A stretch of DNA of 64,000 bases, from the IMG/VR virus record IMGVR_UViG_3300028608_000006, positions 62,001 to 126,000 of that record; one strand, written 5' to 3'. Both the position numbers and the translations under genes were made by a program. Below the pieces are notes generated by a model. That model worked only from the letters and a program-made list of their open reading frames with translations, did not search any database and was not told the DNA's origin. The first letter of the stretch is position 1; each line of letters begins with the position of its first letter. This document shows, one piece after another, positions 896 to 4,884 of this stretch.

Positions 896-3748
896 ATGTA
901 TAACCCATTCTCGGTTGGCGTAAAACAAACCGGAGTCTACGTTCATGTGACTGGCGTTTCGTTTTACAACCTAGCCAAGGACATCGAGAAGTTCTACAGC
1001 ACGGCGCTGGTCACAAAGTATATGATTCGCCGTGAAAGCTGGGACACAATCAAAGTCCATAATTTCTACTTGGTTGAGCTGCACTTCTTGTTAGGTGAAT
1101 TGCTCAAGCTGAAAACACTGCGTAGCCGTCGTCGTTCTCTTAATGAGCTGCGTCAGCTGTTGGAAACTGATACGTGGATCAAGGACACGGTCACGCCTTC
1201 TGGTAAACCTTTCGACTTTAAGCGACTGGATGCCTTTACCAAGAGCCCTTTCCCTAAACAACGGGAGTTCTTGGAACAGTATCCCCTGATCACCAAGAGT
1301 TACCACCTTAAAGGCATCCTGCTGGACTCTGTACCGGGTTCGGGTAAAGCGATGCCCAAGAGTACCAAGGTTAAGGTACCGGGCGGCTGGAAGGCTCTGG
1401 GAGCGATTCAGGTAGGCGATCAGGTCATGACCCCTTCAGGTCGTGTGTCTGATGTGTCGGGTGTGCATGATCAAGGTGTAACTGACGTTTACCGCTTCTA
1501 CTTCGAAGACGGTCGTTGGGCAGACTCTCACCCTGAACACTTGTGGCATGTGGATGAGGTCAGTGTTGTAGATGGCGAAGTGGTCATTAGCCCTGACAAC
1601 GTAACCACGACGCAAGACATCCTCGATCACTTCCAAGACTACGAGTATCAGATCCCGCTGGTTAGCAAGATCGATGGCTTGTTGTCGGGTGAAGGTTTCG
1701 CTTCCATTGAGGTGGCTGAAGAACTGTTGCTGTCAAGTATAGCAATAGACGATCCAGTCCTAGAATTACCGTATTCAGAACGCTTTAATATTGCCAAGGC
1801 GATGTTGGGTCGTTCCGGCTGTCAGATCTCTGCGGGGAGTGTTGCCTTTGTTACTTCTAACACCATGGCGGCATCTAACTTCCAAGCCTTGATCTGGAGC
1901 TTGGGTGGTATTGCTGAGAAGACGGCTATTGTTGACGTCGGTTACCGGGTAGATGTTTACCACGGCGAGATCGAAGAACTGGTGGCTGATCTGGTAGGCC
2001 CTGGGCTTAAGCTGGAAGAGTTGCTTGACCTAGACATGTACAAGAACCTGCGTCTGAAGATCGTGGGTGTGGAGAAACGTGATCGTGAAGAAACCCTGTG
2101 TATTACAGTTGACGATCCTGATCACCTGTTTGTTGTGGACGACTACATTGTAACCCACAACACATTCACTTCGCTGATGTGGTCTCACCTGCTGGGTAAC
2201 GGCAAGACGATCATCATCTGTCCGCTCAACATTGTGGACAGCGTGTGGATGACCCAGATCAAGGAACACTTCAAAGTGACGCCTCGTATCTGGAACAGCA
2301 AGACGGGTCTTCCGTTAACGGATGCTTACGACTACTACATCGTGCATTACGACGCGTTGGTCGGTCCTCGCTTTGCTTATCTGCGGGAATGGATGAAGAC
2401 CACCGTCAAAGCAGACAAGCAGAAGTTTAAGTTGATTGTCGATGAGTCGCAGAACTTTAACGAGATCTCGGCTAAACAGACTCAGAACCTGATTGAGTTA
2501 GCGGACTTGCAATTGTTCGCGGATGCTCTGCCAGTCTCTGGGACTCCGTTTAAGGCACTGGGGAGTGAGATCTACCCCATGCTGTGCATCTTCGATTTGC
2601 ACTTCGACAGCATCGCTAGGGAGTTCTTTAAAGCGTCTTACGGGCGTAACCGTCCTTCACTCATGGGAATGTTGTCGCACCGCATTGGTCGCAGCAAGTT
2701 TACCATCCCTGAGTTGCTCGGCTTGGGTGATCCTCCGCCAATTGAGATCGTTAAGGTACAAGTCCCGAACAGCGACAAGTACACACTCGACTCGATCAAG
2801 CTGGAGATGCAGGTGTACATCCAAGAGCGCTTTGCGTTCTACGAAGAACACATGCCTCAGTACGTCACCTTCTTTAATGAGATCCTTCAGGACTACGAGT
2901 ACGACAACCAGAAGAATCCTAAGGAGCTAGAAGACCTAGCGAAGTACCGGAAGATTGTTCAACGGTTCCGTACCCAGGGTTACAGCAGCTTTACCGATGC
3001 GCAAGACAGCATGTTCTGTAAGCGTGTTGAAGAAGACATTGAAAGCAGGCTCCGTGGTAAAGACCTCTCGGATTTCCGTAACGTTAAGTCGGCGGTGAAG
3101 TATCTGGGTCTGAAGCTGCGTGGGGAGGCACTCGGTAACGTACTCGGTCGCGCTCGCATCAATGCGATCAAGGAAACCATCGAACACGCCAACCTTGAGC
3201 ACTACATCGATGACGTTGAAAAGAAGACGGTGATCTTTACCTCTTACGTTGACGTTCTGAAGCTCTGTGACGAGTACCTGACGAAGAAAGGTTACACTGG
3301 GATCACGGTGTACGGTGAGAACAGTAAGGACCGTGACGCGGCTATTAAACGCTTTGCAGAAGATCCACGTATCAACCCATTAACTGCGGTGTACGACTCC
3401 CTTAAGGAAGGGTACCCTCTGTTGATGGCGAACCAGGAACTCATGCTCAATGCCCCATGGCGTGACTTTGAACTGAAACAAGTTCAAGCACGTATCTGGC
3501 GTACTGGTCAGACTTCCCCTTGCTTCTTCCGTATGTTCGACATGGACACAGGGGACAAGGTTAACATCACGACGCGCAGTATCAACGTGATGGAATGGTC
3601 GAAGGAACAAGTCGATGCATTGTTAGGTCGTGCTGAAGGACACATCATGCTGGCTGATGTTACCGGCGAAGAGATGTTCGACATGAGCGATGAAGCCTTT
3701 ACCCAACCGCTGACCAGAAGTAACAGCGTACTGGATCTGTTTAACTAA
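896..3748 (+). CDS. SF2/SNF2-like helicase interrupted by an intein (about 679 aa after splicing)
   Basis: Walker A DSVPGSGK|T is split by the intein; Walker B LIVDESQ; motif III VSGTP; C-terminal helicase motifs (TVIFTSY, SLKEG, QVQARIWRTGQ). Confidence 0.9.
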   Translation: MYNPFSVGVKQTGVYVHVTGVSFYNLAKDIEKFYSTALVTKYMIRRESWDTIKVHNFYLVELHFLLGELLKLKTLRSRRRSLNELRQLLETDTWIKDTVTPSGKPFDFKRLDAFTKSPFPKQREFLEQYPLITKSYHLKGILLDSVPGSGKAMPKSTKVKVPGGWKALGAIQVGDQVMTPSGRVSDVSGVHDQGVTDVYRFYFEDGRWADSHPEHLWHVDEVSVVDGEVVISPDNVTTTQDILDHFQDYEYQIPLVSKIDGLLSGEGFASIEVAEELLLSSIAIDDPVLELPYSERFNIAKAMLGRSGCQISAGSVAFVTSNTMAASNFQALIWSLGGIAEKTAIVDVGYRVDVYHGEIEELVADLVGPGLKLEELLDLDMYKNLRLKIVGVEKRDREETLCITVDDPDHLFVVDDYIVTHNTFTSLMWSHLLGNGKTIIICPLNIVDSVWMTQIKEHFKVTPRIWNSKTGLPLTDAYDYYIVHYDALVGPRFAYLREWMKTTVKADKQKFKLIVDESQNFNEISAKQTQNLIELADLQLFADALPVSGTPFKALGSEIYPMLCIFDLHFDSIAREFFKASYGRNRPSLMGMLSHRIGRSKFTIPELLGLGDPPPIEIVKVQVPNSDKYTLDSIKLEMQVYIQERFAFYEEHMPQYVTFFNEILQDYEYDNQKNPKELEDLAKYRKIVQRFRTQGYSSFTDAQDSMFCKRVEEDIESRLRGKDLSDFRNVKSAVKYLGLKLRGEALGNVLGRARINAIKETIEHANLEHYIDDVEKKTVIFTSYVDVLKLCDEYLTKKGYTGITVYGENSKDRDAAIKRFAEDPRINPLTAVYDSLKEGYPLLMANQELMLNAPWRDFELKQVQARIWRTGQTSPCFFRMFDMDTGDKVNITTRSINVMEWSKEQVDALLGRAEGHIMLADVTGEEMFDMSDEAFTQPLTRSNSVLDLFN
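1349..2161 (+). mobile_element. Intein (271 aa), Ala-1, class-3 type, with a degenerate LAGLIDADG-like region
   Basis: GSGK|AMPKSTKVKVPGGW...HPEHLW...TLCITV...YIVTHN|T. Terminal His-Asn and +1 Thr are present; removing it restores GSGKT. Confidence 0.9.
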
Positions 3749-3770
3749 ACTTACCTATCGGGGATTCCCT

Positions 3771-4826
3771 ATGTGCTACAACATCGACACCACTGATCAG
3801 TTCGACTCCGTGCCGAGCGAGCAACACGTAGAAACCGTTATGACCGGCTTGATGGACTCGCTGGGCGGTAACGAGGGCATGGACTTGAGCGCTGCTCAGG
3901 TGTACGTACAAGGCGTTCTGTTCGCTGATGGTTCGGTACGTGGTCTGCCTCTGCCGGAAGTCGCCGGCAACGAAGAAGGTGGTTTCTTCAGCAAGGTGGG
4001 CGACGGCATCAAGAAGGTCTGGGAGTACATCAAGAAGATGTTCGCCTCGATCTGGGGTGTCTTCTTCAAATCGGACAAGAAGAAGATGGAAGAAAAGGTA
4101 GACGCTGCCTTGGCCGACGCGGAGAAAGAACTCGAAGCCATGGAGAAGGCTGCTCCTGCACCGGCTGCTGTCCCGCAGGTCGTCCACAAGGCTGAAGCGG
4201 CTATCGCCAAGCTTGAACCGAGCCCAGAGAAGACCAAGCTGGAAAAGGTAGTGGAAGAGATCAAGGAAGCCAAGGCTGAACCAGCTAAGCAGGCCAAAGA
4301 ACTCCACGAGCTCCTGCCGGAAATCTTCAAGGCTGACGTGCTGGACAACGGCAAAATCAAGCGCGCAACCGACAAGCTGAAAGGTGCTGTGGGTCGCTTG
4401 CAAGCCAAGAAGGTTGAACTGGATAAGGCCGAGAAAGATGGTCACTCCATCAACGGCCAAGAAATCCAGCAATACCTCAACGGTTTGATCGGTCTTCCTG
4501 ACGCTTCCCTGGGCATCAAGGACATCGCTTCTGCTCGCGGTTGGATCCAACAGTCCAAGCGTTGCAAGACGGCTATGGGTAACACTCTCGGCGGCATGCT
4601 CAGTGACCAAGCCCGTTACCGTCAACGGATCGAAGAGTGTGAGAAAGGTATCAACGCTTACGCTGGTCCGAAAGACAAAGGCAACAAAGAGCTGAGCAAG
4701 AAGATCGAAGCACTCAAAGCTGACTTTGCTTGTATCAGTGGCATCATCGCCATCACCGACACGGTTTCCTTGGCCATCATCGAAATCAGTGAGACCATTG
4801 AAAAAGCCTGCGTAAGCGTCGTCTAA
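3771..4826 (+). CDS. Probable virion inner-head/ejection-type protein with an acidic propeptide; paralog of 50388-51581
   Basis: Acidic N-terminus with G-N-E sites, then GGFFSKVGDGIKKVWEYIKKMF; helical K/E/A-rich body; strong codon bias. Confidence 0.6.
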   Translation: MCYNIDTTDQFDSVPSEQHVETVMTGLMDSLGGNEGMDLSAAQVYVQGVLFADGSVRGLPLPEVAGNEEGGFFSKVGDGIKKVWEYIKKMFASIWGVFFKSDKKKMEEKVDAALADAEKELEAMEKAAPAPAAVPQVVHKAEAAIAKLEPSPEKTKLEKVVEEIKEAKAEPAKQAKELHELLPEIFKADVLDNGKIKRATDKLKGAVGRLQAKKVELDKAEKDGHSINGQEIQQYLNGLIGLPDASLGIKDIASARGWIQQSKRCKTAMGNTLGGMLSDQARYRQRIEECEKGINAYAGPKDKGNKELSKKIEALKADFACISGIIAITDTVSLAIIEISETIEKACVSVV

Positions 4827-4849
4827 AACAAAAAAGAAACCCCCAACCC

Positions 4850-4884
4850 ATAACCTACCACTCCGCAATGGAGTGGTAGGTTAT
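4850..4884. terminator. 15-bp perfect hairpin at a convergent gene junction
   Basis: ATAACCTACCACTCC-gcaat-GGAGTGGTAGGTTAT. Confidence 0.8.

What the first reader, a model, noticed from the sequence alone, without database searches (positions are those of the whole stretch)
1349..2161. Class-3-type (Ala-1, W-C-T) intein in the helicase Walker A motif, with a decayed homing endonuclease
Seen: the insertion sits between K and T of GSGK|T and begins with Ala rather than Cys/Ser. It carries Trp at the end of block B (HPEHLW), Cys in place of the usual block-F Asp (TLCITV) and Thr before the terminal HN. Established: this WCT triplet defines class 3 inteins, which splice through a block-F Cys branched intermediate. 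Inference: at 271 aa, with only a LAGLIDADG remnant (AMLGRSG...LIWSLGG), it probably no longer homes. Its retention in an essential ATPase motif could make helicase activation splicing-dependent or redox-dependent.
Basis: partly seen in the sequence, partly recalled or inferred. Interest (0 to 1): 0.6.

Follow-up and report, generated by a model that had tools for sequence, protein, structure and literature searches.

The report
Class 3 intein in phage helicase
A jumbo-phage helicase gene is interrupted, exactly inside its ATP-binding loop, by a 271-residue self-splicing protein element of the well-known "class 3" type that has lost its homing nuclease; it is real and well preserved, but it is an ordinary member of a very large phage family.

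Summary
Window 1349-2161 (813 nt, 271 codons) is an in-frame insert in a 950-aa SF2/SNF2-type helicase gene (896-3748, +) of an Elvirus-like jumbo phage. It sits between Lys and Thr of the Walker A motif (GSGK|T).

- **Class 3 signature:** it has Ala at position 1, His B10, Trp B12, Cys F4, Thr-His-Asn at the end and Thr at +1. These residues are invariant in 68 of 68 aligned relatives.
- **Exact boundaries:** intein-less orthologs (RisingSun, Miami, OBP) read GSGKT(F/Y)xSL(I/M/V)W straight through.
- **Fold:** an AlphaFold model (pLDDT 94.5) matches the solved class 3 DnaB intein of M. smegmatis (Z 19.7, 1.6 Å) and PI-SceI (Z 21).
- **Endonuclease:** full-length relatives (337 aa or more) carry two intact LAGLIDADG motifs. 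This one keeps a single half-domain in which both acidic motif residues are replaced, so it very probably no longer homes.
- **History:** the insert has co-descended with the helicase and is under purifying selection.
- **Redox idea:** the cysteine partner used by the M. smegmatis redox trap is absent here.

Verdict: a new member of a known kind, of low to moderate interest. Splicing itself is inferred, not shown.

The parts
896..3748 (+). Helicase precursor gene (950 aa, SF2/SNF2-type DNA helicase of chimallivirus-like jumbo phages), including the stop codon
   Evidence: ORF list. PHROG 62 'DNA helicase' at 6.9e-109 and Pfam Helicase_C at residues 773-871. The C-extein is 63% identical to phage EL gp166.
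896..1348 (+). N-extein (151 aa), ending with the Walker A residues GSGK (1337-1348)
   Evidence: PHROG 62 at 6.5e-34, profile positions 483-639. Aligns to the N-terminal part of intein-less orthologs.
1349..2161 (+). Class 3-type intein, 271 aa (Ala1 to Asn271)
1349..1633 (+). N-terminal HINT half (residues 1-95) with block A (AMPKS...) and block B (His64 = B10 at 1538-1540; Trp66 = B12 at 1544-1546)
   Evidence: Aligns to residues 4-70 of 6bs8 and 6-71 of 6riz, with W on W. His64 and Trp66 are invariant in 68/68. Beta strands with pLDDT 95-98.
1634..2044 (+). Remnant of a LAGLIDADG homing endonuclease (residues 96-232). One alpha-beta-beta-alpha-beta-beta-alpha half-domain is kept. The second motif is degraded to I-A-K-A-M-L-G-R-S-G (Gly154 and Ser156 replace the two Asp; 1808-1816). 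The first motif and its subdomain are lost.
   Evidence: Alignment to full-length relatives carrying PYxxGxxxGDG and LLxGLxDxDG. Secondary-structure order H142-155, E157-160, E165-169, H172-184, E188-194, E198-204, H208-215. 261 of 271 residues superpose on PI-SceI. dN/dS about 0.10.
2045..2161 (+). C-terminal HINT half (residues 233-271) with block F (Cys251 = F4 at 2099-2101) and block G (Thr269-His270-Asn271 at 2153-2161)
   Evidence: Aligns to the C-terminal blocks of 6bs8 and 6riz, with C on C and THN on THN. Invariant in 68/68.
2162..3745 (+). C-extein (528 aa). It starts with the Walker A Thr (+1 nucleophile, 2162-2164) and carries motif II DESQ (2441-2452) and Helicase_C (about 3212-3508).
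   Evidence: PHROG 62 at 1.3e-68, profile positions 723-1160. tblastn found 205 phage records. Motif positions.

Best explanation
Window 1349-2161 encodes a class 3 intein lodged between Lys and Thr of the Walker A (P-loop) motif of a jumbo-phage SF2/SNF2-type helicase.

**How it most likely works.** The gene is translated as a 950-aa precursor whose ATP-binding loop is split, so the precursor should lack ATPase activity. The mechanism is inferred from the class. Cys251 (block F, position 4), activated by His64 (B10) and Thr269 (G5) and positioned by Trp66 (B12), attacks the Lys151-Ala1 peptide bond. This forms the class-specific block F thioester branched intermediate. The N-extein then passes to the hydroxyl of Thr +1, Asn271 cyclises to release the intein, and an O-to-N shift leaves an intact GSGKT loop in a 679-aa helicase.

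**The central region.** The middle 137 residues are what remains of a two-motif LAGLIDADG homing endonuclease. One half-domain is gone and both acidic motif residues of the other are replaced. The element therefore very probably no longer cuts intein-less alleles. It persists by vertical descent, because only a precise deletion would be tolerated in this motif.

**Shown:** the insert, its boundaries, all signature residues, the fold, endonuclease motif loss, co-descent with the host gene, and purifying selection.

**Inferred:** that it actually splices, the reaction path, and the loss of homing.
For: - **Exact insertion.** Intein-less orthologs read GSGKTFLSLIWS (RisingSun), GSGKTFTSLMWT (Miami) and GSGKTYTSLVWS (OBP). 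Removing 1349-2161 from the window gives GSGK|TFTSLMWS.
- **Extein continuity.** The two extein pieces hit consecutive parts of the same helicase profile.
- **Signature residues.** Ala1, His64, Trp66, Cys251, Thr269, His270, Asn271 and Thr +1 are present. His, Trp, Cys, Thr, His and Asn are invariant in a 68-sequence alignment of relatives from IMG/VR, all of them sitting at GK|T/S of P-loops. This is the published class 3 definition (PMC2807308, PMC3196547, PMC7664689).
- **Residue-level alignment.** Residue-by-residue alignment to the solved class 3 Msm DnaBi1 puts W on W, C on C and THN on THN.
- **Fold.** The AF2 model built with the alignment has pLDDT 94.5 and pTM 0.92. VIA-align gives Z 19.7, rmsd 1.6 Å over 123 residues to 6bs8; Z 18.7 to MchDnaB-1; and Z 21 over 261 residues to PI-SceI.
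- **Endonuclease decay.** All relatives of 337 aa or more have both LAGLIDADG motifs. All of 300 aa or less, including this one, fail a pattern test for both motifs (two apparent short hits there, L088 and L022, do not have both). The window has Gly154 and Ser156 where the two Asp stand.
- **Selection.** Against the nearest relative (L006), dN/dS is 0.10 for the intein, compared with 0.04-0.06 for the exteins.
- **Co-descent.** Intein and extein trees share all supported groups, and G+C content equals that of the gene.
- **Distribution.** At least 50 of 60 evenly sampled orthologs are uninterrupted; roughly 6-10 are interrupted.
Against: - No experiment or proteomic data shows the spliced product.
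- The WCT triplet alone does not guarantee splicing. A class 1 intein given W, C and T did not splice productively (PMC7664689), and the Arthrobacter Arth_1007 relative is a dead intein (PMC3196547), although that one lacks Cys F4.
- Block B position 7 is His here, whereas Msm DnaBi1 has the Asp of a DxxH motif. This position varies in the family (C 24, D 20, H 8 of 68). According to PMC2807308 it was dispensable in the prototype.
- dS between the only close pair is near saturation (0.9-1.6), so the dN/dS values are rough.
- Loss of endonuclease activity is inferred from motifs only.
Confidence: 0.85

Rival explanations
1. Domesticated or conditional intein. The element still splices, but its rate is tuned (by redox state, metal ions, temperature or substrate), so that it times helicase activation during infection. 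The retained LAGLIDADG half-domain would serve this role, or some other role such as DNA binding, rather than being junk.
For: - The endonuclease remnant folds confidently (pLDDT mostly above 90).
- It evolves under purifying selection (dN/dS about 0.10).
- It is kept at similar length (260-271 aa) in all eight IMG/VR orthologs of the clade despite 32-40% identity.
- The same genome holds two more class 3 inteins, in the P-loops of a second helicase and of the large terminase.
- Conditional splicing is documented for the class 3 P-loop intein Msm DnaBi1 (PMC6195587).
Against: - The disulfide partner of the documented redox trap is absent: Val47 here, Ile or Val in 54 of 68 relatives.
- Cys158 is not conserved in orthologs L016, L019 and L020.
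- Purifying selection on the remnant is equally explained by the need to keep the HINT halves correctly docked for splicing.
- Most orthologous helicases work without any intein.
Confidence: 0.1
2. Dead intein. The insert no longer splices, and the helicase is either inactive (a decaying gene) or works with a permanent 271-aa insertion.
For: - Precedent exists: the Arthrobacter FB24 Arth_1007 class 3-like intein is non-functional (PMC3196547).
- Splicing was not observed here.
Against: - All catalytic residues are intact and invariant, unlike Arth_1007, which lacks Cys F4.
- Both exteins are under strong purifying selection (dN/dS 0.04-0.06).
- A P-loop split between Lys and Thr cannot bind ATP normally. 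A gene that never spliced would not keep helicase motifs I, II and Helicase_C across a clade with 56-90% extein identity.
Confidence: 0.04
3. Still-mobile intein. The single remaining LAGLIDADG half-domain acts as a homodimeric endonuclease, like the single-motif enzymes of the I-CreI type, and the element still homes into intein-less helicase alleles.
For: - One complete alpha-beta-beta-alpha-beta-beta-alpha half-domain is retained.
- The distribution of the intein among orthologs is patchy.
Against: - Both acidic residues of the motif are replaced (Gly154, Ser156).
- The motif region is not conserved among orthologs.
- Intein and extein trees agree, and intein divergence scales with extein divergence, which argues against recent transfer.
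- G+C content is the same as in the host gene.
Confidence: 0.02

Closest known systems
Helicase intein of Pseudomonas phage EL (gp166, NC_007623 167602-170424) and of EL-like phages
   Same: The host gene is orthologous (C-extein 63% identical) and the insertion point is identical (GSGK|AMP...VTHN|TFTSL). It carries the same class 3 residues, has a similar length (262 aa) and has a degenerate second LAGLIDADG motif.
   Different: The intein is only 41% identical. GenBank and RefSeq annotate the gene simply as 'putative ATP-dependent helicase domain' and 'DarB-like antirestriction', with no intein feature in the records read here.
Mycobacteriophage Bethlehem DnaB intein (class 3 prototype; PMC2807308) and the Deinococcus radiodurans Snf2 intein (block F branched intermediate detected; cited in PMC3196547)
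   Same: There is no N-terminal nucleophile. The WCT triplet and Thr/Ser +1 are present. The host is a helicase-type NTPase, and insertion is mostly in the P-loop.
   Different: Those were shown biochemically to splice through the block F Cys, whereas this one is known from sequence and model only. Block B position 7 is His here (Ser in MP-Be).
M. smegmatis DnaBi1 and M. chimaera DnaB-1 class 3 mini-inteins (PDB 6bs8, 6rix; PMC6195587, PMC7664689)
   Same: The HINT core superposes at 1.6-2.1 Å with Z 18.7-19.7, and W, C, T, H and N sit at equivalent positions. Insertion is at the P-loop K|S/T site.
   Different: Those are 139-145 aa mini-inteins with a disordered linker, whereas this one keeps a folded 137-residue endonuclease remnant. 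The Cys48 redox partner of DnaBi1 is Val here.
PI-SceI (VMA1 intein) and other LAGLIDADG-bearing inteins
   Same: The overall two-part architecture is shared: a HINT domain with an inserted LAGLIDADG fold. 261 of 271 residues superpose, with Z 21.
   Different: PI-SceI is a class 1 intein (Cys1) with two catalytic LAGLIDADG motifs and an active endonuclease. Here one half-domain and both acidic motif residues are lost.

Membership tests
Intein (HINT-fold protein-splicing element) | HINT fold formed by the N- and C-terminal parts of the insert | tested here: met
   The AF2 model has pLDDT 94.5. Foldseek and VIA-align hit dozens of solved inteins, for example 6bs8 with Z 19.7 and rmsd 1.6 Å over 123 residues.
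Intein (HINT-fold protein-splicing element) | In-frame insert in a conserved host-protein site; removing it restores the uninterrupted protein seen in intein-less homologs | tested here: met
   RisingSun, Miami and OBP orthologs read GSGKT(F/Y)xSL(I/M/V)W without an insert. At least 50 of 60 sampled orthologs are uninterrupted.
Intein (HINT-fold protein-splicing element) | C-terminal His-Asn followed by a Cys/Ser/Thr nucleophile at +1 | tested here: met
   His270-Asn271|Thr+1. His and Asn are invariant in 68/68.
Intein (HINT-fold protein-splicing element) | Autocatalytic excision with ligation of the exteins | not testable with these tools
   This needs expression and detection of the ligated helicase or of the junction peptide.
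Class 3 inteins (Tori et al. 2010, PMC2807308) | No Cys/Ser/Thr nucleophile at intein position 1 | tested here: met
   Ala1 at 1349-1351. The column is Ala in 48 of 56 aligned relatives that have it.
Class 3 inteins (Tori et al. 2010, PMC2807308) | Trp at block B position 12, two residues after the block B His | tested here: met
   His64-Leu65-Trp66. It aligns with Trp67 of Msm DnaBi1 and is invariant in 68/68.
Class 3 inteins (Tori et al. 2010, PMC2807308) | Cys at block F position 4 (in place of the usual Asp) | tested here: met
   Cys251 aligns with the block F Cys of 6bs8 and of gp41-1_WCT and is invariant in 68/68.
Class 3 inteins (Tori et al. 2010, PMC2807308) | Thr at block G position 5 | tested here: met
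   Thr269 is invariant in 68/68.
Class 3 inteins (Tori et al. 2010, PMC2807308) | [quoted passage not shown] | tested here: met
   Thr +1 is the Walker A Thr. The residue is Thr, or in a few cases Ser, in all 80 fetched relatives.
Class 3 inteins (Tori et al. 2010, PMC2807308) | Splicing absolutely requires the block F Cys and proceeds through a block F branched intermediate | not testable with these tools
   This is a biochemical criterion (PMC2807308; Brace et al. 2010, cited in PMC3196547).
Active LAGLIDADG (DOD) homing endonuclease domain | Two LAGLIDADG motifs (blocks C and E), each ending in a catalytic acidic residue | tested here: not met
   The first motif and its subdomain are absent. 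The second reads ...AMLGRSG, with Gly154 and Ser156 in place of the Asp residues. Relatives of 337 aa or more have PYxxGxxxGDG and LLxGLxDxDG.
Active LAGLIDADG (DOD) homing endonuclease domain | Alpha-beta-beta-alpha-beta-beta-alpha core fold, twice | tested here: inconclusive
   One such unit is predicted at residues 142-215, and the model superposes on PI-SceI over 261 residues.
Redox-trap intein of the Msm DnaBi1 type (PMC6195587) | A second cysteine placed to form a disulfide with the catalytic block F Cys (Cys48 in DnaBi1) | tested here: not met
   The aligned position is Val47, and it is Ile or Val in 54 of 68 relatives. The only other Cys (158) lies in the endonuclease remnant and is absent from orthologs L016, L019 and L020.

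The most novel reading that the evidence does not exclude
In this clade of nucleus-forming jumbo phages, the endonuclease-less class 3 inteins have been kept as post-translational gates rather than as stranded parasites. One genome carries three of them, each splitting the P-loop of a key DNA-handling NTPase (two helicases and the large terminase). The folded, selectively maintained LAGLIDADG half-domain would then act as a sensor or DNA-binding module that sets when the enzymes become active.
Probability: 0.08. Interest if true: 0.6.

Novelty: new member of a known kind. Interest (0 to 1): 0.2.

Why it matters
This finding mainly matters for annotation. The gene encodes one helicase plus an intein, not a 950-aa "DarB-like" protein. 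Pfam and NCBIfam miss the intein at their own thresholds, so such elements go unmarked in jumbo-phage records.

It adds a well-defined example to the picture of phages as the reservoir of class 3 P-loop inteins. At least 539 relatives were found in IMG/VR in a single scan.

The clade also offers a natural series from full-length inteins carrying an endonuclease to endonuclease-less ones. That series could be used to study how inteins persist after losing mobility, or to mine compact class 3 splicing domains for protein engineering.

It does not change what is known about intein mechanisms.

Tried and rejected
- **Single-sequence AlphaFold.** It gave pLDDT 33 and was discarded. It was repeated with the 68-row alignment.
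- **Megablast against phage records.** No near-identical genome was found; the nearest known phage, EL, is reachable only at protein level.
- **Pfam and NCBIfam on the insert.** They gave only sub-threshold hints (Hom_end_hint 0.036; intein_Cterm 0.4) and could not decide anything. A weak YajC hit (0.18) and Csy3 hits (0.4-0.5) were treated as noise.
- **Literature look-ups.** Tori & Perler 2011 (PMC3133030) is not held, and the supplement of PMC2807308 is not held. I could therefore not check whether the phage EL helicase intein is already listed among class 3 inteins. I recall from memory that InBase lists phage EL inteins, but this is unverified.
- **Redox-trap idea.** It was checked against the DnaBi1 precedent and is not supported (see the membership test).
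- **Active single-motif endonuclease.** This was rejected because the acidic motif residues are lost.
- **Loci first taken as the same site.** L011 (Aeromonas phage PS1) and L012 (vB_PQ1) turned out to hold the intein of the second, paralogous helicase. Their true orthologs of this gene are uninterrupted.
- **Spliced model.** The exteins were searched separately by reference. The two extein pieces were concatenated only inside a local tree-building script.
Full report
**1. What is in the sequence**

The window belongs to a 231,788-bp IMG/VR virus record and corresponds to its bases 62001-126000. ORF 896..3748 on the + strand encodes 950 residues. It matches PHROG 62 "DNA helicase" at 6.9e-109 and Pfam Helicase_C at residues 773-871.

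Residues 148-151 are GSGK (nt 1337-1348). The next residue is Ala (1349-1351). 271 residues later the chain reads Val-Thr-His-Asn (to 2161) and continues Thr-Phe-Thr-Ser-Leu-Met-Trp.

**2. Is it an insert?**

The part after 2161 (searched on its own, by reference) finds 205 phage records. They are led by Pseudomonas phage EL and its relatives at 63% identity, followed by Erwinia phages RisingSun and Joad (52%), Klebsiella phage Miami (47%), Vibrio and Photobacterium phages and phage OBP. All are large phiKZ/EL-like (chimallivirus-type) phages.

In RisingSun gp211, Miami gp214 and OBP_263 the protein runs GSGKTFLSLIWS, GSGKTFTSLMWT and GSGKTYTSLVWS without interruption. Taking 1349-2161 out of the window gene gives GSGK|TFTSLMWS. 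The two flanks separately match consecutive parts of the same helicase profile: positions 483-639 and 723-1160 of PHROG 62.

I used the intein-less RisingSun protein as a query and took an even sample of 60 of its 204 matching phage records. At least 50 are continuous across the Walker A motif. About 6-10 are interrupted there: the EL group, FishSpeaker, PDCC-1, phiKT1028, SL2, PA1C, and possibly two more. The insert is thus a sporadic, precisely bounded intervening sequence in an otherwise conserved site.

**3. Is it an intein, and of which class?**

- **Standard libraries.** Domain libraries barely see it: Pfam Hom_end_hint at E 0.036 and NCBIfam intein_Cterm at 0.4, both below cut-off.
- **PHROG and PDB sequence hits.** The insert matches the intein-bearing stretches of PHROG families for primase, terminase and helicase loader. 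It also matches solved inteins by sequence: gp41-1 carrying an engineered WCT motif (6riz, 9.8e-9) and the class 3 DnaB intein of M. smegmatis (6bs8, 7e-6). In those printed alignments Trp66 lies on the block B Trp, Cys251 on the block F Cys, and Thr-His-Asn on Thr-His-Asn.
- **Published definition.** Class 3 requires no Cys/Ser/Thr at position 1; Trp at B12, Cys at F4 and Thr at G5; and usually Ser/Thr at +1. Most members sit in ATPase P-loops of helicase-type proteins and phage terminases (PMC2807308, PMC3196547). Cys F4, His B10 and Thr G5 form the catalytic triad (PMC7664689). K|T of the P-loop is called the "classic" P-loop intein site (PMC5050341). The window's element meets every sequence criterion.
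- **Family scan.** A pattern-plus-tblastn scan of IMG/VR with an alignment of eight such inteins found at least 539 relatives. All 80 that were fetched sit directly after the Lys of a G-x-x-G-x-G-K motif and are followed by Thr or, rarely, Ser.
- **Invariant residues.** In the 68-sequence non-redundant alignment, His64, Trp66, Cys251, Thr269, His270 and Asn271 are invariant. Position 1 is Ala in 48, Ser in 4 and Cys in 4.

**4. Fold**

Folding the insert alone failed (pLDDT 33). With the 68-row alignment the model has mean pLDDT 94.5 and pTM 0.92.

Foldseek puts PI-SceI first (3.9e-10) and includes the class 3 DnaB inteins. VIA-align gives:
- Z 21.0 with 261 aligned residues at 3.3 Å to PI-SceI;
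- Z 19.7 with rmsd 1.6 Å over 123 residues (27% identity) to the class 3 M. smegmatis DnaBi1;
- Z 18.7 to M. chimaera DnaB-1.

The two ends of the insert therefore build a HINT domain, and the middle superposes on part of a LAGLIDADG endonuclease domain.

**5. The endonuclease remnant**

Family members of 337-379 aa carry two canonical motifs. The first is P-Y-x-x-G-x-x-x-G-D-G. The second is L-L-x-G-L-x-D-x-D-G, followed by L-V-x-S-L-G-G. Under the pattern test, every member of 300 aa or less lacks both, with two partial exceptions.

In the window's intein the region of the first motif and its subdomain is simply absent from the alignment. The short stretch that MAFFT places there (residues about 103-118) is the only low-confidence part of the model. 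The second motif reads R-F-N-I-A-K-A-M-L-G-R-S-G, with Gly154 and Ser156 where the two Asp stand.

The predicted secondary structure of residues 142-215 is helix-strand-strand-helix-strand-strand-helix, which is one LAGLIDADG half-domain. The remnant is the second half of a two-motif enzyme, without its acidic motif residues. Loss of homing is a well-grounded inference, but it is not shown.

**6. History**

The nearest relative is another IMG/VR phage of 233 kb (L006/L017). It has the same intein at 80% amino-acid identity, while its exteins are 90-95% identical.

Nei-Gojobori dN/dS values:

| Region | dN/dS |
|---|---|
| N-extein | 0.044 |
| C-extein | 0.060 |
| Whole intein | 0.103 |
| N-terminal HINT half | 0.115 |
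| Endonuclease remnant | 0.099 |
| C-terminal HINT half | 0.053 |

dS is 0.9-1.6, so these values are rough.

Seven more distant orthologs (L016, L018-L021, L043, and EL) all have a 260-271-aa intein at the same site without LAGLIDADG motifs. Their HINT identity to the window (54-64%) tracks extein identity (56-64%), and the remnant is at 32-40%.

Maximum-likelihood trees of inteins and of exteins recover the same supported groups: {window, L017}, {L019, L020} and {L018, L021, L043}. There is no supported conflict. For that tree the two extein pieces were joined inside the script only. G+C content of the insert (0.49-0.53) equals that of the gene.

Together this indicates that the endonuclease was lost before this clade diversified. 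Since then the intein has been inherited vertically under constraint, with no sign of recent homing.

**7. Mechanism and rivals**

- **Most likely (0.85):** a splicing-competent class 3 intein whose excision completes the Walker A loop. The precursor is expected to be ATPase-dead because Lys and Thr of the loop are 271 residues apart. That a P-loop intein blocks ATPase function is reported for RadA and assumed for DnaBi1 in PMC6195587.
- **Conditional or domesticated intein (0.10, not exclusive of the first):** motivated by the maintained remnant and by two further class 3 inteins in the same genome. It is weakened by the absence of the DnaBi1 disulfide partner (Val47) and of any conserved second cysteine.
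- **Dead intein (0.04):** unlikely given the intact, invariant catalytic residues and the strong constraint on the exteins.
- **Still-active homodimeric endonuclease (0.02):** unlikely given the lost acidic residues and the congruent trees.

**8. Novelty**

Class 3 inteins in P-loops of phage helicases and terminases have been described since 2010. The orthologous element exists in the cultured phage EL, where the records read here do not annotate it as an intein. This is a new member of a known kind. It would not surprise a specialist.

What may be useful is the annotation point and the natural series of endonuclease-bearing and endonuclease-less class 3 inteins in jumbo phages.

Interest is 0.2. 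The most novel reading not excluded is that the inteins act as retained post-translational gates on three NTPases. I give it about 0.08 probability, with an interest of about 0.6 if true.

Noticed in passing
Same virus record, outside the window: G000:C1:203958-204716 (-) = L003:1501-2259 (-): A second class 3-signature intein (253 aa; GYGK|ALANS...EHQW...TTCISV...VTHN|T) lies in the P-loop of a second, paralogous DNA helicase (C-extein PHROG 16, 4.3e-27). Its LAGLIDADG motif is degenerate (LLRGLLDATG). The inteins of Aeromonas phage PS1 and phage vB_PQ1 sit in this paralog, not in the ortholog of the window's gene.
   Followed up: partly
Same virus record, outside the window: about G000:C1:7826-8767 (-) = L004:910-1851 (-): A third class 3-signature intein (314 aa; QQGK|MQRNS...EHLW...ASCIEV...VTHN|T) lies in the Walker A motif of the large terminase (N-extein PHROG 2, 2.9e-37). 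It begins with Met, and both of its LAGLIDADG motifs are degraded. One phage thus carries three endonuclease-less class 3 inteins, each splitting a P-loop.
   Followed up: partly
Alignment A2 (68 inteins from IMG/VR loci L016-L095): There is a sharp length split. All members of 337 aa or more keep both LAGLIDADG motifs, while those of 300 aa or less lack them. Deletion of the first half-domain therefore appears to be a recurrent route of decay. Eight WCT inteins nevertheless begin with Ser or Cys (for example L047, L057), like the three exceptions mentioned in PMC2807308.
   Followed up: partly
window 1529-1531 (intein His61, block B position 7): Block B position 7 is His in the window and in 8 of 68 relatives (the Elvirus-like clade). 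Most relatives have Cys (24) or Asp (20), and M. smegmatis DnaBi1 uses Asp in a DxxH motif. Whether His changes N-junction activation is unknown.
   Followed up: no
window 1349-2161, and the public records of phage EL (NC_007623 gp166, AJ697969): Pfam and NCBIfam do not call this intein at their curated thresholds. The orthologous EL gene is annotated as 'DarB-like antirestriction' or 'putative ATP-dependent helicase domain' with no intein feature. Class 3 phage inteins are probably widely unannotated.
   Followed up: partly
window 3741-4868: Two long ORFs overlap on opposite strands: 3771-4826 (+), 351 aa, and 3741-4868 (-), 375 aa. The + strand one matches PHROG 21850 (unknown function, 8.1e-48) and occupies the position of EL gp165. 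The antisense one is probably spurious.
   Followed up: partly
L010 (Pseudomonas phage SL2, NC_042081 74259-77168): Among Phikzvirus genomes sampled, SL2 carries a 274-aa class 3 intein at the GTGK|T site of the orthologous helicase, whereas KTN4, PA7 and many other phiKZ-like phages are uninterrupted. Its second motif reads LLQGLMDTCG, with one Asp replaced. This looks like a more recent acquisition or an earlier stage of decay.
   Followed up: no
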